Shown here: in pieces, positions 34,941 through 63,412 of the stretch
How positions within the stretch are numbered: the first letter of the stretch is position 1
Layout of the letters: every line of letters starts with the position of its first letter
Source of the DNA: Diplonema japonicum
Lineage: Eukaryota > Protista > Euglenozoa: Diplonemea
Length of the DNA: 64,000 nt
Assembly: GCA_964019335.1 (NCBI GenBank)
Contig: OZ025725.1
Coordinates: forward strand, 62,001-126,000
Direction of reading: 5' to 3'
Notes under the pieces: model-generated
The model's input: only the letters and a program-made list of their open reading frames with translations
The model's database searches: none
What the model was told of the DNA's origin: nothing
Program-made: the position numbers and the translations under genes

Positions 34941-35803
34941 ATAACTCGAGCTGGGTTTTCAAGGGTGGGAGTGAAAATAAGATTTTACATTATGTCACTC
35001 CCAGCTTTATTTTCACTCCCAGTTTACCTTGAAATTAGGCCCAGGAGTGAGATAATGTTCAAGCGTGAAATAATGTAACATTATTTCACTTCTGGGCCTA
35101 ATTTCACCTATTTTTACAATGGGAAGGATGCCGAAGGCAATGGGCAAAAAGGCGAAGGATACAAAGGCAGCGGCGTCGAAGATCGTGAACGCCAGCTTGT
35201 CATGAAAAGCACCAGCACTTATGAAGCATAGTGGTACCGCTTTTGCTCTTTTCACAACTTTAGAACAACAAGATCGAAAAGCCCGACGGAAGACGAGTAT
35301 TGTATTTCCAAGATATGAAGTACAATTTGGCAAGTTACAGCAAGATCAACGAAACTTCCGTAAAAAATGCAGAGCTTTCCCAGGGTTGCACTTTTTTTGA
35401 AGGCCATGAGGTGAAAAAAGCTTCGGTGTTTAGTCAGGAACAAATGAAAGAGTATCTGGCAATGCAATTCAGCGACCCCTACAACATAGTGCGCCAGGCA
35501 TATGCAGCTTGCATGTTTGCAAGAGGGATGAGGACAAAAGAGTCGCACAACCTGAAATTTAGCGATGACACTCTGTAACCCAAATCCCACTTTTCACCTG
35601 TTGTAACCCTGTAACCTCCCACCCTTTCAAACCCGGCTCTTGTATTAGTGAAAATAAGAGCATTATTCCACTTGTGGTGGCAGGTTTAACTCGTAGCTTT
35701 TTACTTCACGAGCGAAGAGAGTGAAGTAAAAAGCTACGAGTTAAACCCCCTGCCACCACGCGTGAAATAATGCAATCTTATTTTCACTTAATAAATAGCT
35801 AAT
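34941..35803 (+). mobile_element. Crypton-like tyrosine-recombinase element, copy A (decayed)
   Basis: Inverted repeats 34941-34971 / 35616-35645; broken YR gene; hairpin 35643-35793; terminal ATAAATAGCTA (reverse complement of TAGCTATTTAT). Confidence 0.75.
35119..35578 (+). pseudogene. tyrosine recombinase pseudogene (N-terminal half to box I)
   Basis: STYEA*WYRFCSF and KKASVFSQEQMKEYL...MFARGMRTKESHNLKFSD (box I G-x-R-x-x-E-x-x-x-L), with stops and frameshifts. Confidence 0.75.
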
Positions 35804-35892
35804 TTTATTGATAACAACAACACTTGTTATAGTATCAGAAAAAAAAAAGAATGCTAGCTAGTGTTATGCATTACAAATACACTCCTTAATGG

Positions 35893-35932
<40 letters not shown>

Positions 35933-36065
35933 GTAACCGTTTCGGCCCCAACAAAAAAAAAAAAATAACTCGCCTGTTTCTTTTTTCTTTTTTCTTTTTA
36001 TCTTTTGTATCTTTTTTTTTTTTTTTTCTTCTTTTTTTTTTTCCTCCCTATTATTACTAATAACT

Positions 36066-36110
<45 letters not shown>

Positions 36111-36125
36111 TCTGGGGAAGGCCAC

Positions 36126-37676
36126 ATGAAGCAGAGCAAGGTTCGATTGCTGGTGACCTCAACGCAGGCAGGATGGTTCAAACCCCCTCCCGAGCGGAAG
36201 AAGTTCCATTTCTGCCAAGCAGTGTGTAACGTACCGGGCTTTCCAGAGGACAAACCGAAGGAGGACCCGTACTGGATGGACTCGGCGATCACGGGAAACT
36301 GGAGATACAAAAAAAGGGGCCCCAACGTCGCGTCTCTAAAACACGGTGCGACCGCATGGAAGGGTGACGCAGAAAAAGGGATACCTGCAATGCCCCCAGC
36401 AGACTACTTCGGGAACAAACTGATCCCGAGGGACGAAGCAGCAAAATTCCTCCCCGATATCCACATCGACGGCCTCGCAGAAGAAATCACAGGGCCCATA
36501 AGAACCCTGGGCAGGCATGTTGTCCCACATCAATTCCATGAATATTACGATGAGTCACTTGTCGTGGAAGGGTTGTACGGGAAAAGAAGCGGTGACGACA
36601 AATCGAGGGAAAAGACATGGAAAGCGAATCTTTCAATGTATCTACACCGCCACCCAATGGCCGATGAAATGCAGAGAAAAATGTTAATCGGGGATGCAGA
36701 GGCGCAGGATAGGTACCAAGATCCAGACGATGTAGAGTACGAGGAGGAGATCATCGCCGCCCTCAAACACGGCGACATAGACACCGCATGCAGCATCTAC
36801 AAAAAACTGGTCGACCCCCCGAAAAACTGGCACATTTATACACTGATGGTCAACGAGTTCGTGACGAGGGGTCTCTTATCTGACGCCATTTCTGTTTACA
36901 ACGAAATGCAGATATACGACATCCCTCCAGACGCTGAACTGTTCTCTTCTATATTAAGCTGTGCGATCGCCGCTGAGCACCCCAAACGGGTAACATGGCT
37001 TATCGGGGAAGCACGTAAAATCCACTCGAACGGTGTTACCATTCCCAAAGACGGCTTGGCGCAGCTATGTGTTCGTGCAGTTCGTTACCTCCTCGAGGCA
37101 GACCCCAGGCTGGCGGTTCGTATATACAAAATAATGGAAATTGAGGATCTGCTGTCCATGCACAACATCGATTCGAAAGCTGCAGCGTTGCTTTTAAAAG
37201 CCCGGGAGCTTGGTATCCTCCCTGAAACGGATCCCATGGTCGGCGGGCATCACCACCGCTACGTGTACAGTTTGCCTTCAAATGGTGCGACTAGAAATGG
37301 TGATGAGAATGTTGTTCAAGATGGTGGCGAACGAGGAGAGTTTGGGTTTGGTTTGTCGTCTGAAGAGGTTGAGAGGGTACAGAAACTGATGGAGGAGGAG
37401 GAGGGCGAGCGGGACGTGCAGTTGCCTTACTTCAAAAAGAGCCAGCCGAACCACCCCTTGCAGCCCAGCGTGGTAAAGGAATATCGCTACTCCCTTGTCC
37501 AAGGCACCCACAGCACGGATGTGCCTTACCCATGCAAACGTGACTGGGCCCTCTCCAACTCTTCATCCTCACCCGAAAATCGGTACACCTTCAGATGGAA
37601 TGGTCGCAACACGCGCATGGTGTCCGTCTCCGCTTCCGAAACTCCTGTCACCACCTCACCCGAGATTTGGTTCTAA
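36126..37676 (+). CDS. PPR-containing protein, probably mitochondrial
   Basis: IYTLMVNEFVTRGLLSDAISVYNEMQIYDIPPDAELFSSILSCA is a canonical PPR. Confidence 0.75.
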   Translation: MKQSKVRLLVTSTQAGWFKPPPERKKFHFCQAVCNVPGFPEDKPKEDPYWMDSAITGNWRYKKRGPNVASLKHGATAWKGDAEKGIPAMPPADYFGNKLIPRDEAAKFLPDIHIDGLAEEITGPIRTLGRHVVPHQFHEYYDESLVVEGLYGKRSGDDKSREKTWKANLSMYLHRHPMADEMQRKMLIGDAEAQDRYQDPDDVEYEEEIIAALKHGDIDTACSIYKKLVDPPKNWHIYTLMVNEFVTRGLLSDAISVYNEMQIYDIPPDAELFSSILSCAIAAEHPKRVTWLIGEARKIHSNGVTIPKDGLAQLCVRAVRYLLEADPRLAVRIYKIMEIEDLLSMHNIDSKAAALLLKARELGILPETDPMVGGHHHRYVYSLPSNGATRNGDENVVQDGGERGEFGFGLSSEEVERVQKLMEEEEGERDVQLPYFKKSQPNHPLQPSVVKEYRYSLVQGTHSTDVPYPCKRDWALSNSSSSPENRYTFRWNGRNTRMVSVSASETPVTTSPEIWF

Positions 37677-37868
37677 AAAAGAAATTAAGACAAAGAAAAA
37701 AAAAAAACAACAGCAGCAAAAAAGTGTTTTGTTCCCCCCCTTCCTTTTTCCAAGTGTGATTTTTTTTGTTTTTTTTTAAAAAGAATGTTCTTTTTTTTTT
37801 TTAGACCCTCATTTTTTTTAAAAAAACAGGGGCCTGGCTCTTCATTGATTCATTCCCCTTCCTTCTCC

Positions 37869-38216
37869 ATGCGAAGGTCGAGTCTGAAGCCGGTGACAGG
37901 GCCGAGTCGAGGTACACCCAAGGAAATATATTACCTTGAAAGAACAGCTTCTGGGAATATGGTGCAGGTAGGGCCTGTGACGCTGAACGATATGCGCGAG
38001 GCGTTGGTGGGCGGGAGGATCAGCATGTGGTCGATGGTCGCCACAGATGACGATGAAAACTGGAAGGTTCTGGGAGAGACAGGCGAGCTGTGGAAACTGG
38101 TAGAACGCGCGATGGAAGAACACACAACAAAAGAGAAAGTCGTCGGGTTGTTGGGAAGCAGGAAGCGAACGAGAACAGGGACCATGCTCCGCAAATCCTT
38201 AAAAGCCTCTGCATAA
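37869..38216 (+). CDS. GYF_2 (DUF4339)-like domain protein
   Basis: YYL...QVGPVTLNDMREALVGGRI...V...ENWKVLGE matches the GYF_2 pattern. Confidence 0.65.
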   Translation: MRRSSLKPVTGPSRGTPKEIYYLERTASGNMVQVGPVTLNDMREALVGGRISMWSMVATDDDENWKVLGETGELWKLVERAMEEHTTKEKVVGLLGSRKRTRTGTMLRKSLKASA

Positions 38217-38340
38217 CGCAACAACCTTCTTCCTTCAGTTGTTATCCCACCACAACCTTCACTTCGTGTTTACATTCCCCCCCCCCAAAAAAAACGAAAA
38301 AAACCACCCCCAAAGGAAAAAAAAAAAAAAACAAAAAAAA

Positions 38341-40666
38341 ATGTCAGGAAAAGGTAAAGGGCTCCCCCTAAGCATGGCGGGGGGGTATCATCGAGGCGGG
38401 CTCAATTCACTCCGACAAACAGGGCCCCCACCACGAATAGAAGTGTACACCAGCAACCTGAGGTTACAACGCATGGATGGTGCAACAATGCCAAAACATC
38501 CCGAAGTCGGGGGGGGGTGCCCGTGGGTCAACAACGAAGCAGTTGGCAGGGACAGCCCGGAAACAGCGCTTGTCCAACCAGACTACAAGCGGCATGACAC
38601 AAGCGGGGAACCCTGCGCCGCGTTCGGCTTGGAACCCCTGGACGTAAACTTCGAAGGCTGCACGATCGAAGAGTTGCAAGACCAGGTTCTCAAGGCAGTT
38701 TCGAAGGAAAACATCACACCGAAGCAATCTTTAGACATTCTAAGGGTTCTATCAAGCAAGCCCGGCGGAAAGCCCACAGTAGCTTGTCTCAACAGGGTAC
38801 TGACTACGTGCAAAGCTCACGGAAATTCCCAAGACGCGATCCGAGCTTTTAAATTCCACCACGGTAGAGAACTAGCCGACTCCAACACATTCCGAATAGT
38901 CAGCGATATCGCAAAAATCTGTCAAAGTTTGGAACTAGCTCACGTGGCAGTCGCATCCATTGAGGCGAGGAAGGTGAAACCAGACTCCCGCACTATGTCA
39001 AGCCTAACCTCGGTTGTGATGGATGGAAAGACGTTTGACAAGTCAAGAATGACGATATCTCAAAAGGGCCCGCTGCTCAATTCCGTACTCCTTCTCAACA
39101 AAGCGGAAAATATCTCCCTGACGTCCGTTCAGAAATGCTACGCGGTGACAAAACTCGCTCTCTGCGGGTGCCAATCGGAGGCGCTGCAATTCTTCAAAGA
39201 CACGCACACGGAAACATCACAATATTCGCCTGAAGTGTACAACCAGCTCCTCGAAGCAGCCACCGAACACGACGCCAGCTTACTGCCTGTTGTTTTTAGA
39301 CATATGCAGAAGGCTGGTATCGAACCCTCCAAGGCAAAACTGTTAAAATGTTTCGACACTCTATACACAAGAGAAGAGTACCTCAATGAAGCCCGGAGGA
39401 TCTACGACATCATCAAATCGGAGAAATCAAAAACACCGAAAACTACCGCGGAGTACGTGTCGATGGAAGGCTTGGCTCTGAAAAGAGGGGTCAAAGGGGG
39501 TCCTGGCAAGAACGAGCTTTTAAAAATGTGGGACGAGATCGCTGCAAGCAAGCAAGCCTACAAGGACGACCTCCCGCAGAACTTAGTTCGCAAGGCACTT
39601 CACGCGTTGGTGGTGGCAACCTTCGTCGAGGGTGAGGCCAACAACCTCAAAGACACTCTCACCGACGTGGCACTACTGTGCAAGCAGCAGCACACCAACG
39701 AATGCTACTCCAAAGACACCATCGACCTGCTTCTCTCTGAAATCGGCAGCGGCAAGGTCACCCCGCCCACAAGAGGCGCGGTATCCAGCTGGGAACTCGC
39801 TTCTTTCACCACCGATATCAAAAACAACAGTTTGGACGTGTGGGCATTCAAAGCAATGTGCCACGGGCTTGAAAAATGCGACCCAACCGCCGCGAAGTGG
39901 TCCAGACAGATGGCGGAGCTCCTGGCAAAGAGCACAGCAGGGGAAGAGGAAAAAGAGGTACCATTAAAAAAATAATAATAATAACAATAAAACAGGCCGA
40001 GGAAGACTTGGACGCAGAGATGGAACTCGCAGCACTTTTAGAAGGCTCCGATGATGGGGTGGAGACAAAGCAGTCCTTTTTCACACCGCAGTTGGGCCAG
40101 GAACTGACGGCCACCGCTGACTACGTCATCGTCCTCGACTCGGCAGCGTGCAACGAACTTTTCTCCAACGATGCTAACTACAAGAGACTTGTGTCCATCG
40201 TCAGGAACGCTCAACCTGTGAAGTGTCTCATCTCCCCCGCTACTCAGCTCTCTTTGTCGAAGGACTCCCCTGCTGTCCTATCTGTGCTCATGAAGGAATA
40301 CGCAGAGAGGCAGGACTCATGGGTGATCCCGCTGCCCCTCTCAGTTCACTTCGAAGTAGCCACGAACCCCTTCAGATCCCGACCTAGAAAGAGAAGAAGG
40401 CTCACTGCCGATCAGCGGTCGCAAGAACCCGCACCTTCTCTCACATCTGAAATTGACATGCTTGTTGCACTTTGTTACCGTCTGCAGGGGACGGAGAATA
40501 TTGGTATGAAACGGGGAGGAATGGGGGGGAATTAAAAAAAAAAAAATTAATAATATAGGGCGCGACAAGACCATCCTCGTCTCGAACTCCGAAGAAAACC
40601 GCAAGACTGCTACGGAACAGAAGATAATAACGCTAAGTGTCAAGGAGCTGCTTCATGGACAACAGC

Positions 40667-40700
<34 letters not shown>

Positions 40701-40701
40701 A
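38341..40701 (+). CDS. PPR-like helical protein with C-terminal PIN-like domain; introns 39958-39995 and 40504-40558
   Basis: PPR-like VYNQLLEAA...VFRHMQKAGIEPS. After splicing: VIVLDSAAC...IDMLVALC...KTILVSNSEENRKTA, a PIN-like strand/helix pattern. Ends in polyQ, TGA 40699-40701. Confidence 0.6.
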
Positions 40702-40911
40702 GAGGGAAAAAAAAAGAATATAAAGAACACCACCACCCCCTCCTTCCCCTCCAATAGTGTAAACGATTCTTTCATGCCCCCCCCCCCCACCCCATTTCTT
40801 CTTCCTCTTAAAGTACTGCAAAAAAAAAGTGGAGGGGGGACCGGGTGGGTGTGACAAGGAAAAGGAGAGGCGAGGCGTCTCCTATTAAACAAAAAAAAAG
40901 AGAGAAAAAAA

Positions 40912-43343
40912 ATGAGCCAAACAGAAACAGATGTTGAAGAGCAAAGCCCTGTGCCGGACCCAGAATCCACGCTGCTAGACAAAAGCGGCAAAGGCTTCGC
41001 AAAGGACACAGCGGCACGGGCCATCGACTACGCAGCAGCAGAGGGCGCCATGGAGGAAATGAGCGACGCTGGGGGTGCGTCCACTGCGGCAGAAGACGAC
41101 GGAATGCCTACAGTACCTCTACACTCTGCAGGCAATGACGTGAACCCCTTAGAAGAACAGGACGGTGTCTGGAGAAGATTTCGCGAACAGTACAACAACT
41201 GCGATAGAGGAACCCTGGGCCCGCTTAGACTGGAAGACGTAGAAGAACACCGTCCACCCCAACCCACCACAAGAATGGGAAGACTCCGGCAGGTTCTGAC
41301 AAGATCCGGAAGACGAGAACGAAACCGTGCAAGAACAGAAGAGAATATTTACAGAACTCTGCCCGGACTGACAGCCGTAATGGTTGTCCGAATACAGAGA
41401 ACATGGAGAGGTTACATCACAAGGAGAAGCATCAACTTGGTCAGAGCGACTGGATCAGGTATCAGCGACCTGGAGTCAAAACGAGTTTTACAATCTGCGG
41501 CACACTACGGAAAGATGCCTATTGAAGATGTGGATGGGATACGACATCTTCCTTTGAGTTTTTACGGGGCGTCGGCGATCCCCAATGATACATCTGTGTA
41601 TAGAGTCAGGCTTGCAGAGTTTATATGGTACTTTGGTGTGCGTCATGGTGGGTGGAGCGGGATTGGGTTGATATTGCTCGCTTTGTGGTTTTCTGGGACA
41701 GTTGGGGCGACGTACCTCATCCCCGGGTGGGCTGCCATGTGCTTGAAAACATTCTTCGATGACGGTGAGTCGTCGTTGACCATCGACCAGCTTATTTCTT
41801 GGGTCATCATGTTTTCGATGTTGTGTTGCATTGGGGTCGGGGTTCTTCACATGTTTCTGGTATTTGAACAGGAACGGTTCGGGCAGAAGCTCGACTTCAT
41901 CCTCGCGTTGGTGGGTGTCAAGAAGTCGAAGTTGATCAACCAAGCACAGCTCCACTCGTTGAGATCGGAAGACCTCGGCCGCACCAAAAAATCGATTTAT
42001 AAATCCGCCCCGCTAGCAGCCCTCCATGGTTTACACACATTCGCAGGGGTTATAACCGTTCTAGCATTTGATTGGCACTTGGGTCTTGTCAACCTTGTCA
42101 CTCTTTGCATCGTAATTGTAATGATGTCGCTGTATGACAAGATGGTTTCAAACCAACAGCTTATCATCCGAGAGGTTGCGAAGAGAGAAGGCGTCATCAG
42201 TTATTACCACAGAAAATACGCCATTAACGATGAGGAATTCACGTCGAGGAACTACCAGCTTGGGCTGTCAAAGAGCATTATGAGAATGCACTCGTCTTTC
42301 GGACGGGTTCACGGGTTGATTGGGTGCACAGCACTGATGCTAGCTGTATCATCCACTGTGTTTTTCTTCTATGCAGGTGGTAAACGGGTTCAAAGAGACC
42401 ACATCACCACGCACACGTTCGTTCTCGCGTTTTGTTATTACGTCTTCACGATGTTCTCGTTCTTCAAATTTAATGAGAATCTTGTTGATTTCCTGCTGTC
42501 GAAGGTGAACATGCGCCGGGTTTTCAAGGTGGTGTGGCACTTCCGAGATTTCTCCGACGAGGCTGCGTTCAAAGAACGACAGTGTGCTATAATATCGCAA
42601 GCGGAAGGGATGAAAGAATACCGGGTCCAGCCCAGGTCCGTCGACCTCTTCGTCATCATTTTCTTCATTGCTTTTATAATCAGCATGTGGCTGTTCTATT
42701 TCGGGGTGGACCGCGGGGAATTGGAATGCAAATCGAAACCAATAAGTTGCGAATACGCTAGCGACAATGGTGTCAACCTCAAAGTCGACCCTATAAACGT
42801 GAATTTCGAATTCAGTTTTTTCTACGCCTGCACGCCACTCCTGCCACGATCCATCGCACTGAGGAAGTGCGCTTACCGAATCCTACAAAACACATCTCGG
42901 CAGCTATTACCTATTGGGGCCCCATACCGTGCCAGGTTGACCTACCAAGGCTGGCGGGACTACCCCCGTGGCTTTTCAAAGGTGTTCGAGACGAAGATCG
43001 GTGTAGATGGCTTCACCTACGCGTGTCCTACCATGAACAGGTCGAAGATAGATATTTTCGATGTGCAGCCGTTCATCACAGAAGCACACAAGGTAGAGAC
43101 ATGGGCGAGAGCCGGGGTGGGCTATGGTGAGGCTGAAGGTGTTGCTTTCGATGATTATAGAGAGGTGTGTGTGTTTTTAGGAGGGGGGTAAAAAAGGGGG
43201 GGGGGGAAAAGGGGGAAAAAAAAAAAAAAAAAAAAAGGTCTTTTTCGGTGAGAACAATTTCCGGGGATGCTTTGCCAACCAACCAGTTCCTGAAGGTGCT
43301 TGTAAGTTGAGCAATCCCGAAGTTAAGTGCTGGTATTGTGTTG

Positions 43344-43423
<80 letters not shown>

Positions 43424-44575: not shown

Positions 44576-44597
44576 GGGGGGGGGGGGGGGGGGGGGA

Positions 44598-48024: not shown

Positions 48025-48039
48025 GAAAAAAAAAAAAAG

Positions 48040-48071
<32 letters not shown>

Positions 48072-51908: not shown

Positions 51909-51965
<57 letters not shown>

Positions 51966-54648: not shown

Positions 54649-57300
54649 ATGGAAGGGTATGAGAAAGAGCTCGAATGTGCGATATGCAGAAATGTAATGG
54701 CGGACCCAAGGCTGTTAGCCTGCCAACACGTATTCTGCATGAGATGTATCTACGGGAGCTGTGAAAAAGGCGAGGGTGTGAAAGACATCGTGGTGAGCTG
54801 CCCTTACAATTGCGGGATGGAGGAGGTTCAGGACGTTCGCGGGCTGCCCAAGTGCTCGGTTATTTCAAATTTGTGCCATAATATAAGATCGGAGAGGTTC
54901 AAAGAGAAGATTGAACAACTGTGCGACGCCTGCGGGGAAGAAGAGGGAGAGAACACACAAGACTTCACACAATGCAGCAAATGCTCTTCTGTTCTGTGCA
55001 AGCCTTGCACGGACACCGACCCTGTCCACACCTACCTGTGCGGAAGCGAACAAAAATTCTTCCCGTTCTACTTCGGTTGGGGAATGGCAGAGAAAGAACT
55101 TCGAAAAGTATTCGGTCTATCACGAATGGTGACACCCACTGTCACATGTGTTGAAAGATTATTCGTCCCAACCTACTCCTTCAGGGTACAGTCTCAAGTC
55201 AAAGTATGCAATTCAGCAACGCAAGTAGTCCGTGTGGTGAATTCCATCGTTGGTGATCCTTCCATCCCTGAAAATTTCCGCGCTAAGATAGAGCGCGACA
55301 GCCACTCTCCTGACACATTCCCGCAGCTCGAGCTTTTGTACAAATTGCAGGAATCGAAAACAAGGCAAATATCATTGTTGACCTCCGTCAAAAATCTTCT
55401 CTGCAACTCACCTCTAACCCCCATCCTCGAACGCAACAGCGAGACCATCACCGACATGAGAACATGGGATTTCGGCTTGTCGAACGACTGCACGGTTCTC
55501 ATTGAGATGCAGTTGATTCTGATTAAACAGTTGTGCAACCCTCTTGCTAGGAAGATACATGTCGTGAGCACACTGGAAGGCCTACGGCAGTTGAAGGGCG
55601 TCAAACGAGACACGCAAAGCCGGTCCGATCTGGCGAAACAGCTCAAAATGGTGAACAAAACCGAGAGTTTTCTCGCGAAGCAGTCCAAGCAAGAGTGCGA
55701 CCTCTTCAGCACCATCGACACCACCGTGCAAGGCTTGGTGAAAAAACAACACTCCGCGTATCAAAACTGGGTTGACACACTGACACCAATATCGCTCCAC
55801 CCCATGAACGCAGCACTTAAGGGCGGTGTTGATTTACAACAAGGAAGCCCAGCTGTTCTAGGAAGGTTCACGTCCAGTGGATGTGCCACATTCACTGTTG
55901 ACGTGCCTGCAAGTGGGGAATATGGTGTTGATTTGTTGTATTCTTGCACGACGTCCGGGTTGCTTGAGATAACATGCTGCGGGGAGGTTTACCCTGTTGA
56001 ATACCTTCCCACTCTTTCTTGGAAATCTTTTAGGACAGCGCGCCCTGTTCGAAATATTTGTTTGCCTAAAGGGAAGGTCGAGCTGGCCATCACTGTCCCC
56101 CCACGCGGCACCCCACCTCCCGACGTTGCAAAACTCACACTTCAGTATTCCCCTCCGCGGTCTGAACCGGCTGTCTCGGAAGACCCTCCCGGGTGCACAA
56201 ACACCCATGAGGAGCTTATCACCATCCTCGGGTTTTGTCACAAATTACAACTTGAAATTCTCGAGGATCTGGACGGGACATACGGCAAGGCAGCGGCCGC
56301 CTACTGGGGAGGGAGGAAGGAGGACCACATTCGCAGAGAGGACATCATCAACAAAGAGCGACGGGACCTGCTTAACATGCTCCGGAATGTGCAGCAGGTA
56401 ATGTTATAAGAAAAAAATGGAGGGGGAGATGAAATAAAAAAAAAAACTCACGCGGAAAAAAAAAAAAAAAAAAAAAAAAAGGTGCGGATATTCCACCGGC
56501 AGTATTTTTATTGCGTGCTTGCCGGGCTTACCACCCCGAAGACGACCAGTGTTGTCCATCCATTTCCCGTGGTATATGAACGAAGCTCAAAAAGAAGAAG
56601 AAAAAAATACCGAACAGACCGTCCCGCGACCTTCCAAAAAGACAACAGCGGAATCGCTGCCAAACCTGCTGCAAGTATTGCAGCCAAGAATACAGGAACT
56701 AAGGGAGGAACAGCAAAGCAGCATGTCTCGGGTATGCATCCCTCCCATTGTCATCTTAACACGGAAAAATAGCTATTTATTGCCAACAAATAATGAGTCA
56801 TTATTTAACTCGAGTTCCCGAATTTTTTGCACGAGGGCCCGCAGGGCCCGAGTGCAAAAAAACGGTAACGAGTGTTAAATAATGGCTCATTTGGCGGCAA
56901 GTAAGTCGTTTTATTTCACTTTTCGTCATTTGAGTCACTCACTCTTCACTGCTTTCACTGCTGTTTTTTTTCACGCAGGTCAGCTTTTTGGGGATTTTCC
57001 TAAGGTAATACAGGGTAGCTATTTCGCCGTGGCATTTAAAGGGGAAGTAAGGCACTTATTCCCACTTTTAAGGGCTGGAATGGCCTCAGATGGCCAAAAA
57101 TAGTCAAAATACCCCCACCCCAAAAAGATTTTTCAAGGGGTTGGGCGCATTTTTTTCCACGACAAGACCCATTTTTTCACTCTGAAAGGCATAATCTCAT
57201 TATTTAACTAGTTAAATAATGGCGATTTCGCGTTAAATAATGGCCGTTTCGCGTTAAATAATGAGGCCCCTAGTGAGTGAAGAAAATGACGAAGAGTGAA

Positions 57301-57338
<38 letters not shown>

Positions 57339-58585
57339 ATCAGGACCCCCCATTGCACGTTCAGGAACAGTTTCAAAGCGTGCTGTTGCAAACCTTCGAC
57401 CTCCTGCACAGGGAGCAGATCCTGCAGCTTCGGGAAGGGATACAAGAGGCGAGGGAACAGCTCATGCTGTATATCCAGCCGGGTTGCGTGGCGGCCTTGC
57501 TCGAACACCTGACGCCTTTGCCAGAGGGCGTCGATGCTTACAAAACCAAAGGCGACATCCACGATTTGCAGACGATACAAGTCCTGTGGAACAAGGCCTT
57601 CGAGAAGCTCAAGGGAGAGGAAGAACGAGAAGAAACCGACAAATTCGAGAAGCTATTCGGATCCCCCAAAACACCTGACGACGTTCAGCTAGGCGACCGA
57701 ATGACCCGAAAGATTGTAGAAGGGCTCATGGACTACACAAGCACGGTAATCCAACAAAGACGGAAACTGGAAGTTTGTATATCAGAACTGAGCACTGAAA
57801 GAGTGGAAGTTTCCGGGGTGGAGGTGTTGCTGAAGAAACGCGACGCGGTCGGTGTAGCTGCAGACAGGCTGGAGGTCCACCTGAAAATCGTGGAACAACT
57901 TCGAAAACTGTTGAAAATGGCGCAGACAACGTCAAGCACAGCACAGAGGTTCCAACTCCTGTCGCAAGTCGTTGTTGCCTTGAAAAAATTACAGACCTCT
58001 GCGTCGAAAACAAACGAGGTAATGTGTGCCATTCAGTCATCGCTGGCGGTCGATGAAACTCTTAAGTTCGAAGACGCCTCAGAAGAACCGTTAATATCTT
58101 GGTTTGTCAAGCAAGATGCGATAAACCACATTGGGCTTCTCGAAAGATGCTTCACTTCGTCCCCCCTTTATGGTGATGTGGAACGTCGCGAAGTTGAGAT
58201 CAGCCAAGAGGACAAGCGAGAGTGCAGGTCGCGTGCTTTCCAAGCCGCTCAGTCTGGCTGGGTTGTGAAGGAGCTTCTCTGCTGCCTCTCTCTTCAAACC
58301 GACTACTCCATTTCAGAACCCATCGAGGTCTCGTTTAAACAAAACACACCCTCGTCCTGCCTCTCATTTGTCACCCACCACCCGTACTATAAAGGTGAAT
58401 ATACTATTCCAACTCACGGATCGCCTCTGCCCTTTCTGATCAACGGGCAGACAGGGTCGATTTACATGACGTACCCACCGCTTGCTGTGGATTCGGTTCT
58501 GCTATCGGTCCCGAGGATCTTGAGGAGCCCTCTTGCGTGGCTTCTGTTGAACGGGGCTGTAATTTGGTGGCGGTGTAAAAAGTGA
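54649..58585 (+). CDS. RING-finger/B-box-like protein with CBM6/35-like beta-sandwich, coiled coils and C-terminal TM; introns 56398-56481, 56572-56617, 56732-57343
   Basis: C3HC4 RING CAIC...CQHVFCMRC...CPYNC; CDAC...CSKC...C; FTVDVPASGEYGVDLLYS. Three GT..AG introns join ORFs 54289, 56482, 56519 and 57353 in phase 0. Confidence 0.7.
56768..57306 (-). mobile_element. non-autonomous copy B of the hairpin/YR element, inside an intron
   Basis: AATAGCTATTTAT terminus; hairpin centred on GCAC-GA-GGGCCC-GCA-GGGCCC-GA-GTGC (56829-56855); IRs 56909-56943 / 57272-57306; 21-bp tandem repeats at 57211-57263. Confidence 0.75.
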
Positions 58586-59008
58586 GTTCCCCCCCCCCCT
58601 TATTTCTTCTTTTTTTCTCTCAAAGATAAGCTACTACTACCACCACCATCGCCCCTCCACTATCCTTTTTTTTTTTTAAATTTTTCGTTTTTAAAGGATT
58701 AGGGGTTACCCCCCCCACCCCGTCTCTTCATAGATTTAAAAAAGAATATGGGGGGGAAGAAAAAAAAAAAGAGATGCTTAGCCGAAGGGATAAATATGGC
58801 AGGTCCCTTTAGAAGGAGTTATTTTCATTAGATGGAGCAAAAAAAAAGAAGAAGAGGAAGAAACACAGACGGAAAAGAAAAATAATAATAATAATAAAAC
58901 TTGTTTATTCCCACCACCCTTTTTTTTTTCTTTCTCCCCCCCCCCCATTACCGTCTACCCCCCCCCCCTTTTTTCTTTTAACTCTACAACAGAGTGATTT
59001 AAAAAGAA

Positions 59009-62000
59009 ATGCCGGTTCGATTTTGCGGTGAAAGTACAACGGATGACGACACGGACATCTCGTTCGAGGAAGGTGACGAGAATATTTCATTGAATAATGA
59101 GTACGATGATTTTCTGAAGTCCCTACAAGGGAGGGAAAGACAAAGATCGACGAGCCTGGCGTCGAGCCCAGTGTGCGACCCGCGCCTGGCAAGTCTGGAC
59201 GTCAAGCTTGACAATATCTCAACAAGCCCAAGAATGCTGAAAACTGCCCGCGAGGAACTTCTAGACGACGTTAACACCTACGGGATACACCACTGTGTAG
59301 GGAAGGTGTACCAAGCAATGAAGGACAACCCCAACGACAGCTTGTTAATCTCATGGGGCTTGGAGCTGCTCGAGGAGTGTTGCGCCATTGACAACGAGTT
59401 GCCCCCTGACGTGAGTATAGACCCGGAACACCTTTTCACGTGGATGGCCACACCAGAGTACGCGCTGCCCTGTCTTGAGCTTCTTATCTGCCTAACCCCA
59501 CAGCTTTTACAACTGAAGGATATTGAAAGGCTTTTGGACATTGTGTGTAGAAACATCAAAAGCCTACGAGACGCGGAGGCACTCGGAATCAGTTCCCCCG
59601 GCGGGCTGACAAGATCGAACACATCAGTCCGTGCGTCGTTCTGCCGAACGTTGAGCAAGGGCTTGAACCCGAACTACAACCCGAACACGGTGGCGATTCA
59701 AATAGCGATCCCGGTCGCGGAGGGTTGCTCGGAACTACTGCTCTCCATCATCGCCGAACGGCCGAAATGCGTCACCCCGGACCATGTGAAAATGGTTCTT
59801 GCCGGATTGACGAATTTTCAAGGTTTTCAAGACGAACCATACCTGTGGCTGATAAGCTTGCGAATTGTTCTTCATGTTGTGAAATCGAGAATGTTGCTCA
59901 AAACCGCTGCCATTGAGTACGGAGCAGTCGCGTACCTACACAGTGTGCTACGGACGGCACGGTTTATCGATCACGAAACGCAGATGAAGGGGCTTCAGAT
60001 ACTCACGGAGATACTCTTGGTCTTGCGGGGGGACCACAAGCATCTGTGGTCGCTGTTGCCCGACGTGGACTTGGTTGCGAGGCTGCTCGCAAAACAAACC
60101 AGCTTCGAAACCCCGTCCGTTCCCTTCCTCCTGTTCTCCGCGTTCGGTACGATCTTTTCGTTCGCCGCGCTTTCCAGCCACGCCCCGGACACCGTGGGCA
60201 TCTTGCTCAACCACGCAAAACACCTCACTGACAAACAAATCGCGTTGCAATGCTGTTCAACTGTACTTGAAATCTGCGGTGTAGACAGTGTGAAATCCCA
60301 CCTTGCGCAGGAAGAGAACTTCTCACTTCTAACCGATCTGATCAAATCAGACAGCAACGGGAATATTTCTTTACTAGCACGTGACGCCATGACACACCAC
60401 GCGCAGAGCGTGCCGAGTCATGTTTATCCGAAGAGCAATTTAATCCGCTTGCTGACAGACATGCTTGCCGACTCGGTTGCGGTGCGGACCGGAGTGAACG
60501 TCATAGAGATTCTTACCGAGAAAGAAGAGATCGCACCGGTGCTCAAAAATGCGTTCTTGGAATGCGAAACGACCGCCGCGTTGTGGACCGCAGCACGGTC
60601 CCCGAGCACCGCGCAGACAACCCAGTTGAAGATACTCCGCATTCTAACAACCCTGCAAAAAAAAGCCGCGTTTCTCGTCGATGCCCTGCCTTCCTTCACC
60701 CGCGAGGAAATTCTCGAAACGGCCCTCCCCGGCTGCCGACCTGACGCGGTGTACTTGTCGTCTTTGCTGTCGGAGCACTCTGTAGACAATGCACTGTACA
60801 GGCACGCCCTGGAGAGCATCCATGAGATATCCGAAACCACCCCGTGGGAGGTCCGTCGGACACTTCAAATAATTATCGAAACCCAACAAGGAACCGCTTG
60901 CAGACAATTTGAATACGAGGAATCGCAGCGCAGAATTACAATACAGCACGAAGCCGATTCGGGGCGGGTCCTCGCGTGGGCCTCGCTGCTCACCGAGGTC
61001 AGAGAAGGGTGCTGCCTGGAGGAAGCGGCGGAACGATCTGAGCTGGCGGATAGTTACAAGGCTCGAAAGGCCTCGATGGTTAGTTATCGGTTCGCCGATT
61101 TTATGTGCGAACGGCAGGCGATCTCCGTCGCGGAAGAAGCACAGCGAAGCATGCTCTTCGATACCTTGTTTGTGTGCAAGGATCTCCACGCAGTCCGTCT
61201 TGCTTGCAAGTTTTCCGAGTCCCAAGCACGCACAGACCTTTATGCCGAGCTGTTGTCTACTTATCCTCACCGGCCCGACCCCACCCCGGTTCACTCCTTG
61301 CTGATGTCAAGTTTGGAGGAACGGTTGGATCTTAGTTACGCTGAGTGTTCGGCGTGGTTGTGTCTATTGTCGGAGCTTGCAAAGTGCGTCAGGGAATGCG
61401 GGGTGAAGGAATGTAGAAAGAACTTCTACGACACAGCAGCGACGCGTCTTATAGAGGAAGAAGGCAGGGGGAGGGAAGAGATCAGGGGATTCCTCGGCAC
61501 GTACGAGGAACTCGCGGAATGGTGTAAACAGTACCCGCCACCACCACCGCCGCCGCCGCCGCCGCCACCCGCGCCTTCTCCGAAAGTTTACACAAGGACA
61601 CTTTCGAGCTGCGCTATGCAGGTTGCGAAGATACCTACTGCGGAGCCTTGCATGGTGGAAAGCGCATCGTCACCACGGATAGCAGAGATAGTTGTGCAGC
61701 CCTGCAGGACAGGGGTGTTCGGAGAGTGGAAACCGAAGGCGGTTGGCAGACCCGCATGGCAGGCAACAGAAGAACACGAAGAACACAAACAGCAGCCGAT
61801 AGCAAATGCTTCGCATGAGGAAGCCGCCGTGCAAGACCCTCAGTACGGCATCGCGCGTGAGATCGAACAGCTGAAAGTGCAATTGAAACATCTCACAAGG
61901 AGCATAGGGGGAACGTGTGATTCGGAATGGGCTGCATGGGAGGAGAGCCTATCAGATATGCACTACCCAAACACATATCTGCATAAGAAGGCAATCCTTG

Positions 62001-62335
62001 CCGACATCGCAAGGGTAGAGGTCTACAAGGAAGCCCTGAGGGCGACGTTGCGAGCCATCTTCGACAGGGAAAATATTCTGCATGCGATTAAAACAGCTGT
62101 AAGCCCATGTGTACACAGAAGGATAGGCACGCACGGGGTGTACACCAGGCTGAGCAAGAGAACAGAAGAACGCCGGTTTGCTGTGATGAAGACTCGGCTG
62201 TCTGCTGCCGACGGAACGGTGAGACGCTCTATCGCAGAGTGGCGTAAGGCGCTGCACAACACTTGCAAACCATTCACGTGGAGGGGTGTGGACTACGAGC
62301 GGAAGATGCTGCATGACACCCCCGATTGGTCCTGA
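59009..62335 (+). CDS. large helical (ARM-like) protein with Glu-rich repeats and polyproline
   Basis: 1108-aa ORF; Leu-rich helical N-terminal half; EE..R repeats; long polyproline tract. Confidence 0.75.
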   Translation: MPVRFCGESTTDDDTDISFEEGDENISLNNEYDDFLKSLQGRERQRSTSLASSPVCDPRLASLDVKLDNISTSPRMLKTAREELLDDVNTYGIHHCVGKVYQAMKDNPNDSLLISWGLELLEECCAIDNELPPDVSIDPEHLFTWMATPEYALPCLELLICLTPQLLQLKDIERLLDIVCRNIKSLRDAEALGISSPGGLTRSNTSVRASFCRTLSKGLNPNYNPNTVAIQIAIPVAEGCSELLLSIIAERPKCVTPDHVKMVLAGLTNFQGFQDEPYLWLISLRIVLHVVKSRMLLKTAAIEYGAVAYLHSVLRTARFIDHETQMKGLQILTEILLVLRGDHKHLWSLLPDVDLVARLLAKQTSFETPSVPFLLFSAFGTIFSFAALSSHAPDTVGILLNHAKHLTDKQIALQCCSTVLEICGVDSVKSHLAQEENFSLLTDLIKSDSNGNISLLARDAMTHHAQSVPSHVYPKSNLIRLLTDMLADSVAVRTGVNVIEILTEKEEIAPVLKNAFLECETTAALWTAARSPSTAQTTQLKILRILTTLQKKAAFLVDALPSFTREEILETALPGCRPDAVYLSSLLSEHSVDNALYRHALESIHEISETTPWEVRRTLQIIIETQQGTACRQFEYEESQRRITIQHEADSGRVLAWASLLTEVREGCCLEEAAERSELADSYKARKASMVSYRFADFMCERQAISVAEEAQRSMLFDTLFVCKDLHAVRLACKFSESQARTDLYAELLSTYPHRPDPTPVHSLLMSSLEERLDLSYAECSAWLCLLSELAKCVRECGVKECRKNFYDTAATRLIEEEGRGREEIRGFLGTYEELAEWCKQYPPPPPPPPPPPPAPSPKVYTRTLSSCAMQVAKIPTAEPCMVESASSPRIAEIVVQPCRTGVFGEWKPKAVGRPAWQATEEHEEHKQQPIANASHEEAAVQDPQYGIAREIEQLKVQLKHLTRSIGGTCDSEWAAWEESLSDMHYPNTYLHKKAILADIARVEVYKEALRATLRAIFDRENILHAIKTAVSPCVHRRIGTHGVYTRLSKRTEERRFAVMKTRLSAADGTVRRSIAEWRKALHNTCKPFTWRGVDYERKMLHDTPDWS

Positions 62336-62347
62336 AGAGGCCAAAAA

Positions 62348-63129
62348 AATAGCTATTTATTTGCAACAAATTATGGCCATAATTTACTCGAGAATCGTGG
62401 GTTTTTTGGCCGAGGGCCCGCAGGGCCCGAGGTCAAAAAAAACGGTTCGAGAGTAAATGGGATGGCCATATTTTGGCGCAAAGTAAGTAATTTTATCTGA
62501 TAGTTCAGAAATTGAGTCACTCCGAGTGACCGAGAAGGTGGGCCAAAAACCCAAAACCAAATTATGAGCTATCAACTGTCAATAATAGCTATCAAATTAT
62601 GAAAAACAGCCTATTTTCAGCTGATTCAGGCGGAAGTGCGGTGACCCTACACATTTTTAGTCCCCCAGGCAACCCTGTTGACCTGCGATATTGCACCTTT
62701 CCAGGTTATAGTTCTCCGTTACACGAAGACCCCCGAAGAAACCGCATGCAAACAAAGCACGGTACAGTAAGAAGCGGTTCAGCGGCTCAGACCCAGGGCA
62801 CTCCATAGACATGAGCTCCTCGAGATCCTCCCGTTCGAAAGTAGATGCTTTCGTCGGGGCCCTTGTTCTTCAGCACGCTCGCAAAAAAGTTTGACACGGT
62901 CCATTCCCCAACCTTCTGGTTGCACTTTTCCTTAAAAACTACCCTTATCTGGGAGTACTTGGTTCAAAGAGAAGAAGGGGCAGCGCCGTTTTTCTTCAGC
63001 TTCCTAAGATGAGCGACTTCAGTCGGTCCTTCGTCTTTTTCCCACGAAAGTCAGCCCATGTTTTCAGGTCCTGTGCTTTGCTTATTTCGGGTAGAAGACT
63101 CTCTTCCTTCTTCGTTTTCGGCATTTGAT

Positions 63130-63177
<48 letters not shown>

Positions 63178-63412
63178 ATGATCTTGAGCTCAAATGTGTT
63201 AAAAAGAATTTCACTCTGCCCCCAATAATGTCACTTTCCCCTATAATTTGGCAGCCACGGACCATAAACACCTACCTCCTGCCCATAATTGAGCTATCAA
63301 ATTATAGCCCAGATTATCAAATTATAGCCCGGATTATCAAATTATGAGAGGGGGGTAATCAGATTATAGGGGGGGGTTAGGAGTGAAGAAATTTCTGACC
63401 TATCAGATAAAA
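62348..63412 (-). mobile_element. Crypton-like tyrosine-recombinase element, copy C (decayed)
   Basis: AATAGCTATTTAT terminus; hairpin centred on GGCC-GA-GGGCCC-GCA-GGGCCC-GA-GGTC (62408-62434); IRs 62491-62523 / 63380-63412; TATCAAATTAT repeats; YR pseudogene. Confidence 0.8.
62657..63124 (-). pseudogene. tyrosine recombinase pseudogene (N-terminal half to box I)
   Basis: Hand translation: MPKTKKEESLLPEISKAQDLKTWADF, APSSL*TKYSQIR, TKASTFEREDLEELM...FACGFFGGLRVTENYNL; frameshifts and a stop. Confidence 0.8.

What the first reader, a model, noticed from the sequence alone, without database searches (positions are those of the whole stretch)
34941..63412. Three copies of a tyrosine-recombinase element family with a conserved hairpin-plus-inverted-repeat architecture
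Seen: copies A (34941-35803, +), B (56768-57306, -) and C (62348-63412, -) differ strongly in sequence but share one layout. It runs terminal TAGCTATTTAT motif, 130-150-nt hairpin, about 30-35-bp IR, body, short repeated motifs, partner IR. A and C carry homologous broken recombinase genes (KKASVF...GMRTKESHNL; TKASTF...GLRVTENYNL); B has no visible ORF. Known: this box I pattern and the LLP..S / PSSLW..YS N-terminus are typical of tyrosine recombinases of Crypton-type DNA transposons. Inference: a diversified YR transposon family with autonomous and non-autonomous members in a euglenozoan, where the YR elements I know are VIPER/TATE retroelements. It may be undescribed.
Basis: partly seen in the sequence, partly recalled or inferred. 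Interest (0 to 1): 0.85.

Follow-up and report, generated by a model that had tools for sequence, protein, structure and literature searches.

The report
Hairpin-ended tyrosine-recombinase transposons in a diplonemid
The three repeats are real, cut-down copies of very small, recently active jumping genes of the marine protist Diplonema japonicum that move with a Cre-like recombinase. Their ends seem built to fold as single-stranded DNA, a layout not reported for this kind of eukaryotic transposon.

Summary
Observation confirmed; interpretation largely supported. A (34936-35801 +), B (56770-57305 -) and C (62350-63411 -) are members of three diverged multi-copy families (at least 40 loci scored each; 655 first-look candidates for B). 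All are internal-deletion derivatives of 1.55-1.7-kb elements that encode only a tyrosine recombinase.

Autonomous B copies are 98.4-99.9% identical. Their 378-aa protein passes PF00589, has the R-K-H-R-W-Y set, and matches Cre best by profile and by fold. No reverse transcriptase is present, and the protein is unrelated to the resident VIPER-like recombinase.

All families share the ends 5' TTTAT...AATAAATAGCTA 3'. Joined, these ends make a perfect 16-18-bp palindrome inside a ~250-nt interrupted hairpin. Insertions lie in T-runs, in one orientation, and 61 of 62 ends have no complex target duplication. Stem mismatches are TC/TC on the sense strand (G·A tandems on the antisense strand) 50 times against 5.

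The end logic mirrors Helitron2 elements and integron attC sites, not described Cryptons. No description was found in the literature searched. Copy B sits in a spliced intron. The scan had already found this family on other pieces of the same genome. The single-strand mechanism is inferred, not shown.

The parts
34936..35801 (+). Copy A: non-autonomous element with an internal deletion that removed the catalytic half of the recombinase gene
   Evidence: A 1-631 matches positions 1-677 of autonomous L047 (83%), and A 633-861 matches 1322-1597 (75%). At least 40 scored loci in the genome.
34936..34971 (+). A 5' end: conserved TTTAT (34936-34940) plus the terminal inverted repeat IR-L (34948-34971)
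   Evidence: IR pair 34948-34971/35616-35639, 88% complementary. The boundary is shared by 20 loci.
35140..35575 (+). A: remnant of the recombinase gene (MGKKAKD...). It is broken by a stop and a frameshift and ends after box I (GMRTKESHNL)
   Evidence: ORFs; homology to the L047/L050 and D-family proteins.
35616..35801 (+). A 3' module: IR-R (35616-35639), a 150-nt hairpin (35640-35789) and the terminal AATAAATAGCTA (35790-35801)
   Evidence: Hairpin -58.4/-60.0 kcal/mol, z -17.4/-18.2; motif position.
56770..57305 (-). Copy B: ORF-less non-autonomous derivative of the 1.69-kb B-family element
   Evidence: B 1-313 matches L027 2740-2414 (87.5%) and B 318-539 matches L027 1273-1053 (85.7%). 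At least 40 copies at 92-96% identity; 655 first-look candidates.
56770..56943 (-). B 3' module: terminal motif (56770-56781), hairpin (56782-56900), conserved unpaired spacer (56899-56908) and IR-R (56909-56943)
   Evidence: z -9.9/-8.9. The tandem G·A (CGAG/CGAG) mismatches, twice, and the GCA triloop lie on the + strand, which is antisense to the gene.
57198..57306 (-). B 5' end: four copies of the motif CATTATTTAAC (57198-57263) and IR-L (57272-57306), ending in ATAAA followed by an A-run on the + strand
62350..63411 (-). Copy C: non-autonomous element that keeps the N-terminal half of a recombinase gene
   Evidence: At least 40 scored loci, all with the same truncation or further internal deletions that keep both ends. 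44% aa identity to the B-family protein.
62350..62523 (-). C 3' module: terminal motif (62350-62361), hairpin (62362-62482) and IR-R (62491-62523)
   Evidence: z -6.8/-6.2. 76.5% identical to the 3' module of B.
62660..63115 (-). C: recombinase remnant (MPKTKKEES...GLRVTENYNL) with frameshifts and a stop. A 49-nt homopolymer run (63128-63176) lies upstream of its ATG
63241..63411 (-). C 5' end: repeated motif CYATAATTTG (three copies, 63241-63327) and IR-L (63380-63411)
56732..57343 (+). Host-gene GT-AG intron of 612 nt that holds copy B in its A-rich tract
   Evidence: One 3511-nt contig of run X6 skips this stretch and two other introns. The junction is in frame (SSMSR|DPPLHVQ). The 5' splice site G/GTATGC matches the species consensus (PMC12621601).

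Best explanation
A, B and C are non-autonomous, internally deleted members of three diverged families of one group of very small (1.55-1.7 kb) DNA transposons of Diplonema japonicum. Their only gene is a Cre-like tyrosine recombinase. The copies in this window have lost that enzyme and must be moved in trans by intact relatives.

Shown:
- Every family has the same ends, 5' TTTAT ... AATAAATAGCTA 3'.
- A 24-35-nt terminal repeat (IR-L) is complementary to a subterminal repeat (IR-R). IR-R is followed by a 110-150-nt hairpin and then the fixed 12-nt tip.
- Each family carries its own variant of a ~11-nt motif (GTKAAATAATG-like), repeated near the 5' end and in both hairpin arms. These are probably recombinase-binding sites.
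- Joining the two ends recreates a perfect palindrome, ATAAATAGCTATTTAT, inside a ~250-nt interrupted hairpin.
- Insertions lie in T-runs, always with the T-strand on the gene's sense strand.
- The crossover is at TAGCTA^TT, and there is normally no target duplication.

Inferred:
- The recombinase joins the ends (as a circle or a tandem junction) and recombines that junction with T-rich targets.
- attL always keeps TTTAT and attR keeps the target's own bases. Stem mismatches are almost always G·A tandems on the antisense strand.
- From these two facts, the reaction probably uses a single strand exchange on a folded bottom strand, completed by replication. This is how integron attC sites and CTX phage integrate. 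It does not look like a classical two-strand Cre-type exchange.
For: Families and deletion derivatives.

Autonomous copies with a single recombinase ORF.

Recombinase identity:
- PF00589 36-42 bits for the B- and D-family proteins, up to 71 bits in the genome scan.
- Near-invariant R142, E145, K169, H249, R252, W275, Y284 across 65 homologues.
- A family profile hits Cre at E 2e-16, with box I, H-x-x-R, W and Y aligned.
- The AlphaFold model (pLDDT 85) matches Cre best, TM 0.60-0.74.

Activity and constraint: copies are 98.4-99.9% identical and dN/dS is 0.17. The D-family protein is present in the D. japonicum transcriptome at 97% identity.

Ends and target:
- Boundaries shared across dozens of loci.
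- T at +1 and +2 after TAGCTA in 90% and 87% of 63 ends; T-rich to +6.
- Left T-runs reach 42 nt.
- 61 of 62 ends have no complex duplication.

Structure:
- The joined ends fold at -60 to -87 kcal/mol.
- Hairpin z-scores are -6 to -18.
- 10 of 27 aligned pairs show compensatory changes between families B, C and E.
- 2x2 internal loops are TC/TC on the sense strand 50 times and GA/GA 5 times, in families A, B/E, C and D.
- The antisense strand is the more stable in 41 of 48 modules.

Other support:
- Head-to-tail junctions between different families, TAGCTA-T(n)-TTTAT (L018, L047).
- Deleted copies keep both ends.
Against: - No circular or single-stranded intermediate, empty site or excision footprint was seen. 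The assembled contigs laid on B show neither.
- The hairpin tip occurs in both orientations. Some tips are perfectly paired, or carry GA on the sense strand. Strand polarity is therefore strong in the outer stems but not absolute.
- One autonomous copy (L055) is flanked by a perfect 17-bp duplication plus an A-rich tail next to TTTT. A recombinase crossover does not predict this.
- Copies within a family are not independent, so the 50:5 count overstates the number of events.
- No autonomous partner was found for family C.
- A purely double-stranded reading (arrays of binding sites arranged as a palindrome) is not excluded.
Confidence: 0.8

Rival explanations
1. Classical Crypton mechanism. The element is excised as a double-stranded circle and reintegrates by two ordered strand exchanges. 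The long palindrome is only an array of recombinase-binding sites, or a cruciform in duplex DNA, and never acts as a folded single strand.
For: The joined ends give a lox-like perfect palindrome, with two inverted 5-6-bp arms around TAGCTA. The enzyme is Cre-like. Repeated family-specific motifs look like binding sites. Tip flipping could come from recombination between inverted sites.
Against: There is no 6-8-bp direct repeat at the two ends. attL keeps TTTAT in about 97% of ends, while attR carries target-type bases. Random segregation of a heteroduplex overlap would not give this. Duplex DNA offers no reason for mismatch positions to be TC/TC on one strand 50:5, in the sequence context (CGAG) that gives stable sheared G·A pairs.
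Confidence: 0.3
2. RNA-mediated spread. An antisense, polyadenylated transcript of the element is copied back by a resident LINE or VIPER/DIRS reverse transcriptase. The internal segment complementary to both ends would act like a DIRS internal complementary region.
For: A-runs of variable length follow the antisense 3' end. L055 has a 17-bp target duplication, an A-rich tail and a TTTT|AAA site. The genome holds at least 150 RT ORFs. An internal segment can splint the two ends.
Against: 61 of 62 ends lack a complex duplication. Shortened copies are internal deletions that keep both ends, not 5' truncations. Each lineage keeps its own recombinase under purifying selection. Triloops of GNA/GAA type are DNA-style motifs (from general knowledge of DNA hairpins). 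The recombinase is unrelated to the VIPER-like one. Natural introns here already have 26-nt A-tracts.
Confidence: 0.05
3. Helitron2-type rolling-circle elements moved by a Rep/helicase encoded elsewhere. The recombinase gene would be a captured passenger.
For: The end logic matches Helitron2. The terminal repeat pairs with a subterminal repeat just upstream of a 3' hairpin. Insertion is between TTTT and T without duplication. Rare copies carry 7-19-bp duplications next to TTTT (PMC3627910).
Against: A six-frame scan of the genome finds no Helitron_like_N, although the tool's control genomes cannot validate that blank. Four to five diverged lineages each keep an intact or recently intact recombinase whose binding-motif candidates co-vary with it.
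Confidence: 0.05

Closest known systems
Crypton DNA transposons (CryptonA/I/F/S; Goodwin 2003; Kojima & Jurka 2011, PMC3212892)
   Same: Both encode only a tyrosine recombinase and no RT. Both are multi-copy, with much more abundant non-autonomous deletion derivatives. Both show microhomology with the target rather than a true duplication. The nearest protein relatives are eukaryotic YR-only proteins (arthropod, mollusc, cnidarian).
   Different: Described Cryptons have no inverted repeats and no hairpin. Where ends are known, they carry 4-6-bp direct repeats. These elements are much smaller (1.55-1.7 kb) and have a 24-35-nt terminal/subterminal inverted repeat, a 110-150-nt hairpin, a fixed 12-nt tip and T-run targeting. 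DUF3504 is not detected in the proteins.
Helitron2 / Helentron rolling-circle transposons (Bao & Jurka 2013, PMC3627910)
   Same: Both have asymmetric terminal inverted repeats, with the 3' repeat just upstream of a 3' hairpin. The hairpins show compensatory changes. Both insert after TTTT and before T without duplication, and occasional copies have variable-length duplications.
   Different: The enzyme is a Cre-like tyrosine recombinase (3'-phosphotyrosine chemistry), not a HUH Rep/helicase. No Helitron_like_N was found in the genome. The hairpin is several times longer.
Integron attC sites and CTX-phage attP(+), recombined as folded single strands by IntI / XerCD
   Same: A tyrosine recombinase is paired with a long imperfect palindrome. 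A conserved unpaired spacer sits next to the crossover. The terminal structure is variable. Features are strand-specific, and the crossover point is precise, just 5' of TT, without duplication.
   Different: The host is a eukaryote. The site is split between the two ends of a transposon that encodes its own enzyme. Single-strand recombination is only inferred here. IntI4 is a weaker structural match than Cre.
DIRS / Ngaro / VIPER tyrosine-recombinase retroelements
   Same: They have a tyrosine recombinase and an internal segment complementary to the joined ends (the DIRS internal complementary region).
   Different: These elements have no RT/RNase H. Their recombinase shows no significant similarity to the VIPER-like recombinase of the same genome.

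Membership tests
Tyrosine recombinase superfamily (Phage_integrase, Cre-like) | Match to PF00589 above the curated cut-off | tested here: met
   B protein 36.1 bits and D protein 41.9 bits against a cut-off of 27.1. The genome scan gives up to 71 bits.
Tyrosine recombinase superfamily (Phage_integrase, Cre-like) | Catalytic R, K, H-x-x-R, H/W and Y | tested here: met
   GGLRGEE, K169, HSMRRSAAT, SWNS, QGYID. These positions are near-invariant in 65 homologues and align with Cre box I, GHSAR, W and Y.
Tyrosine recombinase superfamily (Phage_integrase, Cre-like) | Two-domain Cre/Xer fold | tested here: met
   Model pLDDT 85.3. The best Foldseek hits are Cre chains: E 3e-11, TM 0.60-0.74, about 310 aligned columns.
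Crypton DNA transposons | The recombinase is the only transposition enzyme; no RT/RNase H | tested here: met
   Full-length elements are 1.55-1.69 kb with one ORF. None of the listed RT hits falls on a mini-element locus.
Crypton DNA transposons | No terminal inverted repeats; 4-6-bp direct repeats at both termini | tested here: not met
   A 24-35-nt terminal/subterminal inverted repeat plus hairpin is present. Only T/TT is shared at the two ends.
Crypton DNA transposons | The recombinase groups with named Crypton recombinases | tested here: inconclusive
   The nearest clusters are eukaryotic YR-only proteins, some with DUF3504/QRICH1. Identity to a coral protein is 27% over 302 aa. No labelled Crypton sequence was available, and DUF3504 was not hit.
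Crypton DNA transposons | Extrachromosomal circular intermediate | not testable with these tools
   Only assembled contigs could be laid. Tandem junctions TAGCTA-T(n)-TTTAT exist in the chromosome.
DIRS/Ngaro/VIPER retroelements | RT and RNase H encoded together with the recombinase | tested here: not met
DIRS/Ngaro/VIPER retroelements | Split direct repeats, or ITRs plus an internal complementary region | tested here: inconclusive
   An internal segment is complementary to the joined ends. There are no split direct repeats.
Helitron2 | Rep (HUH)/helicase protein | tested here: not met
   The elements encode a recombinase. PF14214 has no hit in the genome, but the control genomes give no positive for this family, so the blank is weak.
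Helitron2 | Asymmetric terminal inverted repeats with a 3' hairpin; insertion TTTT^T without duplication | tested here: met
   compared with PMC3627910.
Folded single-strand recombination sites (attC / CTX attP) | Imperfect palindrome with strand-specific structural features and a conserved unpaired spacer at the crossover | tested here: met
   (TC/TC 50 against GA/GA 5 on the sense strand).
Folded single-strand recombination sites (attC / CTX attP) | Recombination of one specific strand, resolved by replication | not testable with these tools
   Inferred only, from the asymmetric attL/attR outcome.
LINE-dependent retroposons (SINE-like) | Variable-length target duplications and 5' truncation | tested here: not met
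   1 of 62 ends has a complex duplication. Short copies are internal deletions with both ends kept.

The most novel reading that the evidence does not exclude
These are the first eukaryotic transposons in which a tyrosine recombinase works on a folded single strand of DNA. The bottom strand of the joined ends would fold into an attC/CTX-like hairpin, and a single strand exchange at TAGCTA^TT would insert it into T-runs, with replication finishing the job. This would be a distinct transposon class that combines Crypton enzymology with Helitron2-like end logic. Related elements may be widespread on small environmental contigs.
Probability: 0.35. Interest if true: 0.9.

Novelty: new variant of a known kind. 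Interest (0 to 1): 0.72.

Why it matters
How Crypton-type transposons move has never been shown experimentally, and their ends are usually undefinable. Here the ends are sharply defined. The enzyme is small and Cre-like. Several copies are 99-99.9% identical, so the element is probably still active, and the host can be cultured.

That makes the mechanism directly testable. If the folded-strand reading holds, single-stranded tyrosine-recombinase recombination would extend from bacterial integrons and phages to eukaryotes. It could also yield a compact recombinase with a new kind of target logic.

The elements also matter for annotating this genome. There are hundreds of copies in T/A-runs, including introns and 3' UTRs.

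Tried and rejected
Searches that gave nothing or could not be run:
- Word-indexed protein search with the B protein: no hit. The exhaustive profile search was needed instead.
- The search for related loci with the family alignment failed for lack of a conserved stretch. With the B protein it found no metagenome relative.
The tandem copies on C7 and C52 and further B copies could not be fetched.
- The accession prefixes of L067 and L068 are not in the paper library.

Analyses that did not help:
- The first AlphaFold run, with 7 sequences, was useless (pLDDT 46).
- The window peptides alone give no Pfam hit, because they stop before the catalytic boxes.
- MAFFT did not align the middle stems of the hairpins across families, so covariation is counted only for 27 pairs.

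Hypotheses rejected:
- Target duplications as a general feature: tested and rejected.
- That the 30-nt A-run beside B was brought in by the element: dropped, because a neighbouring natural intron has a 26-nt A-tract.
- That the elements derive from the resident VIPER-like retroelement: rejected.

Full report
**1. Observation**

Counting the conserved end letters, copy A is 34936-35801 (+), B is 56770-57305 (-) and C is 62350-63411 (-).

- The 12-letter end AATAAATAGCTA occurs once per copy, and only at these three places in the window at up to one mismatch. A fourth match overlaps C's own end on the other strand.
- Each copy has a long hairpin next to that end. The hairpins are 119-150 nt, with DNA folding energies of -29 to -60 kcal/mol and z-scores of -6.2 to -18.2 against dinucleotide shuffles.
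- Each copy has a 24-35-nt inverted repeat. One arm is the other terminus; the second arm lies just inside the hairpin.
- Each copy has a short motif repeated near the 5' end and in both hairpin arms. CATTATTTAAC occurs six times exactly, all inside B, against 0.72 expected in the 64-kb window. GTGAAATAATG (up to 1 mismatch) occurs six times in A. CYATAATTTG occurs four times in C.
- The A, B and C motifs differ by single bases (GTGAAATAATG, GTTAAATAATG, GTAAATTATGG).
- A scan of the window with all element sequences finds exactly these three copies.

**2. These are families, and they are deletion derivatives**

The window is G000:C78:62001-126000 of a 62.5-Mb, 132-contig genome.

- A matches at least 40 scored loci at 77-91% identity.
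- C matches at least 40.
- B matches at least 40 full-length copies at 92-96% identity, out of 655 first-look candidates.
- The two halves of B match the two ends of a 1.69-kb element, L027 1053-2740 (87.5% and 85.7% identity). That element has a single ORF.
- A matches positions 1-677 and 1322-1597 of a 1.6-kb element present three times on contig C69 (L047-L049). A has therefore lost the catalytic half of the gene.
- C keeps the N-terminal half of a related gene, ending just after box I. It is 44% identical to the B-family protein over 61 residues.
- I found no partner more than 80% identical to C with a complete gene.
- Many shorter C and A copies are further internal deletions that keep both ends. 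This is the pattern of DNA-transposon derivatives, not of 5'-truncated retrocopies.

**3. The enzyme**

- A six-frame scan for PF00589 finds 31 places in the genome.
- Four B-family copies (L027, L055, L056, L057) have open frames of 429-440 codons; the protein counted from MPKVKK is 378 aa. A fifth copy (L058) has a shorter open frame of 405 codons and diverges internally.
- These elements are 98.4-99.9% identical in DNA. dN/dS against a diverged B-like lineage (L059) is 0.17.
- Families A, B and D are 27-38% identical to one another and share GG(L/M)R..E, H-x-x-RRS, W and Y.
- A profile of these sequences finds 12,072 proteins at E<=0.001 among 1.84 billion representatives.
- In an alignment with 59 of the best hits (65 sequences in all), R142, E145, K169, H249, R252, W275 and Y284 are at least 90% conserved.
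- The family profile hits Cre best among solved structures (E 2e-16), with box I, GHSAR, W and Y aligned. XerC/D and IntI4 follow.
- An AlphaFold model built on that alignment (pLDDT 85.3) matches Cre chains best (E 3e-11, TM 0.60-0.74, about 310 columns).
- The top profile hit, P0001, is a Trinity transcript of Diplonema japonicum in EukProt. It is 97% identical to the D-family protein. This names the organism and shows transcription.
- The published genome note (62.3 Mb; PMC13598402) fits, and it says nothing about transposons.

**4. Not a retroelement**

- The full-length elements have no room for RT.
- The genome has at least 150 RT ORFs, and none of those listed falls on a mini-element locus.
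- A separate GC-rich recombinase family (L028-L030, L062; open frames of 542-818 codons) looks VIPER/DIRS-like. Its recombinase shows no significant similarity to the B protein (E 1.2).
- By contrast, the B protein aligns over 302 residues with a coral protein (27% identity, E 3e-28).
- The ESM Atlas places it next to eukaryotic YR-only clusters (arthropods, molluscs, cnidarians), some with DUF3504/QRICH1.
- Many homologues sit on environmental contigs of only 1.0-2.5 kb and are named at most 'integrase'.

**5. Ends, junction and target**

Aligning boundaries over dozens of loci gives, in gene orientation, 5' (T-run)TTTAT ... AATAAATAGCTA|TT 3' for all families.

- Joined, the ends read ATAAATAGCTATTTAT. 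This is a perfect 16-bp palindrome in A, B and C, and 18 bp in B.
- The 3' 260 nt plus the 5' 60 nt fold into one interrupted hairpin of about 250 nt (-60 to -87 kcal/mol).
- In that fold the junction faces a conserved unpaired stretch. In B, C and E this is ...ATAAAAnnACTTAC..., which is as invariant across these families as the tip itself.
- After TAGCTA, T occupies +1 and +2 in 90% and 87% of 63 distinct ends. T stays at 70% or more to +6, then falls to 46% by +8.
- Before TTTAT there is a T-run with a median of about 8-9 nt and a maximum of 42 nt. The right-hand run has a median of 3 nt.
- Orientation is always the same relative to the T-strand.
- A search for duplications finds none of any complexity in 61 of 62 ends.
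- attL keeps TTTAT (A at -2 in 97%), while attR carries target-type bases (A at +5 in only 16%). A classical exchange with a 6-8-bp heteroduplex overlap would be expected to leave both versions at both ends. A single crossover point at TAGCTA^TT fits better. This step is inference.
- Head-to-tail junctions between different families exist: L018 has TAGCTATT|ATTTCAC, and L047-49 have TAGCTA-T19-AT|TATTTCAC.
- Coordinates show same-family tandems on C7 and C52. I could not fetch them.

**6. Strand polarity**

- In B and C of this window, the two 2x2 internal loops of the hairpin are CGAG/CGAG on the + strand, which is antisense to the gene. That is, they are tandem G·A mismatches in the sequence context known to give stable sheared pairs. 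The loop is GCA.
The same polarity holds in families A, B/E, C and D.
- The antisense strand folds better in 41 of 48 modules.
- Between families B, C and E, 10 of 27 aligned pairs keep pairing through changes on both sides.
- The tip of the hairpin is found in both orientations. Examples are GGGCCCTGCGGGCCC against GGGCCCGCAGGGCCC, and GAGCGAAGCGAG against TCGCTTCGCTCG. Some copies carry two heads.
- Duplex DNA gives no reason for such mismatch regularity. Folding as a single strand, mostly the bottom one, is therefore the best reading, but it is not shown.

**7. Comparison with known systems**

- Described Cryptons lack inverted repeats and carry 4-6-bp direct repeats or nothing. Non-autonomous Cryptons are known (PMC3212892; PMC13465315).
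- The end logic here is that of Helitron2 (PMC3627910). In Helitron2 a terminal repeat pairs with a subterminal repeat just upstream of a 3' hairpin. Insertion is between TTTT and T/C without duplication. Some copies have 7-19-bp duplications next to TTTT.
- The enzyme, however, is a recombinase, and Helitron_like_N is not found in the genome. That blank is weak, because the control genomes cannot ring for this family.
- The resemblance to integron attC and CTX attP(+) covers the folded bottom strand, the unpaired spacer, the crossover 5' of TT and the absence of a duplication. It is functional and untested.
- Papers on diplonemid genomes mention LINE, SLACS, TATE, MULE and Helitron, but no such element (PMC10161547). 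Searches combining diplonemid or Crypton with tyrosine recombinase and hairpin found nothing relevant.

**8. Unexplained exception**

The autonomous copy L055 is flanked by a perfect 17-bp repeat (AAAGGGGGACTTGAGAA). An A-rich tail (ATAAATAAATAA) lies on the antisense strand, and TTTTTTT lies just before the left repeat.

This looks like target-primed reverse transcription, or like the 'one-ended' Helitron2 events. With RT ORFs abundant, an occasional retrocopy is possible. As a general mechanism it is contradicted by the other 61 ends.

**9. Context in the window**

- Copy B lies in an intron. One 3511-nt contig of run X6 joins 56399/56482, 56571/56618 and 56731/57344 (splice sites read).
- The host gene therefore has GT-AG introns of 84, 46 and 612 nt, and the last holds B. 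The join is in frame.
- The 5' splice site G/GTATGC and the A-rich tract before the 3' splice site match what is published for this species (PMC12621601).
- The 84-nt intron has a natural 26-nt A-tract, so B probably landed in such a tract.
- Copy C starts 15 nt after the stop codon of the 1108-codon ORF 59009-62335.

**10. Relatives elsewhere**

- Two environmental contigs (L067, L068) encode a recombinase 43-52% identical to hit P0004.
- They carry a hairpin with 57-nt arms and GA-rich mismatches. It lies next to a 32-nt repeat whose partner sits at the far end, beyond the ORF.
- The module therefore seems to exist outside D. japonicum, with the hairpin on the other side of the gene. The ends could not be defined from two contigs.

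**11. Earlier scan notes**

After my own first reading, the scan's notebook showed that the same family had been reported from other pieces of this genome. I re-tested the points I use here:
- the organism;
- the junction-spanning hairpin;
- the G·A mismatches and flipped tips;
- the Helitron2 likeness.

**12. Limits**

- Only assembled contigs, not raw reads, could be laid.
- No labelled Crypton, DIRS or Helitron library was available.

**Verdict**

This is a real, young family of hairpin-ended tyrosine-recombinase transposons that appears undescribed in the literature I could search. It is a new variant of the Crypton kind, with a plausible but unproven single-strand mechanism.

Noticed in passing
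window 56398-57343 (+): The gene that spans about 54.6-58.6 kb has three GT-AG introns: 56398-56481 (84 nt, with a 26-nt A-tract), 56572-56617 (46 nt) and 56732-57343 (612 nt). The last holds copy B and is spliced out in an RNA-derived contig of run X6.
   Followed up: yes
window 62335-62361: Copy C begins 15 nt after the stop codon of the 1108-codon ORF 59009-62335, so it lies in or at the 3' UTR. I did not examine whether it alters 3'-end formation.
   Followed up: no
L055 2115-2150 and 3800-3835 (G000:C36): An autonomous B copy is flanked by a perfect 17-bp direct repeat, AAAGGGGGACTTGAGAA, plus an A-rich tail, next to TTTTTTT. It is the only complex target duplication among 62 ends. It looks like a TPRT event or a one-ended Helitron2-type event.
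   Followed up: partly
L028-L030, L062 (G000:C74, C114, C25, C66): There is a separate GC-rich family with a 542-818-codon frame that contains a weak PF00589 match, followed by further ORFs. It is probably a VIPER/DIRS-like retroelement. Its recombinase is unrelated to that of the mini elements.
   Followed up: partly
G000, genome-wide: At least 150 RVT_1 matches lie in open frames of 1000-2100 codons, and many are identical in score. The genome carries large, apparently young retroelement families.
   Followed up: no
L067 289-508 and 1951-1982; L068 33-201 and 1633-1663: Environmental contigs of unknown host encode a related recombinase. They have a GA-mismatched hairpin with 57-nt arms next to a 32-nt inverted repeat whose partner lies beyond the ORF. 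The hairpin-plus-repeat module seems to occur outside D. japonicum.
   Followed up: partly
L018 ~1500-1510; L047-L049 ~2602-2630; G000:C7:109917-110805; G000:C52:309169-310117: Head-to-tail arrays of elements, sometimes of different families, are joined as TAGCTA-T(2-21)-(T)TAT. That is the predicted circle junction, sitting in the chromosome.
   Followed up: partly
L005, L047, L021 (3' modules); L040 against L031; L061 against L065: Hairpin tips occur in flip and flop orientation within a family. Some copies have two small heads in tandem (one TC..TC, one GA..GA), which recalls T-shaped parvovirus ends.
   Followed up: partly
window 35887-35928, 57306-57336, 63128-63176: Homopolymer A/T runs of 30-49 nt are common in intergenic DNA, in introns and inside element C. 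They are the preferred landing sites of these elements.
   Followed up: partly
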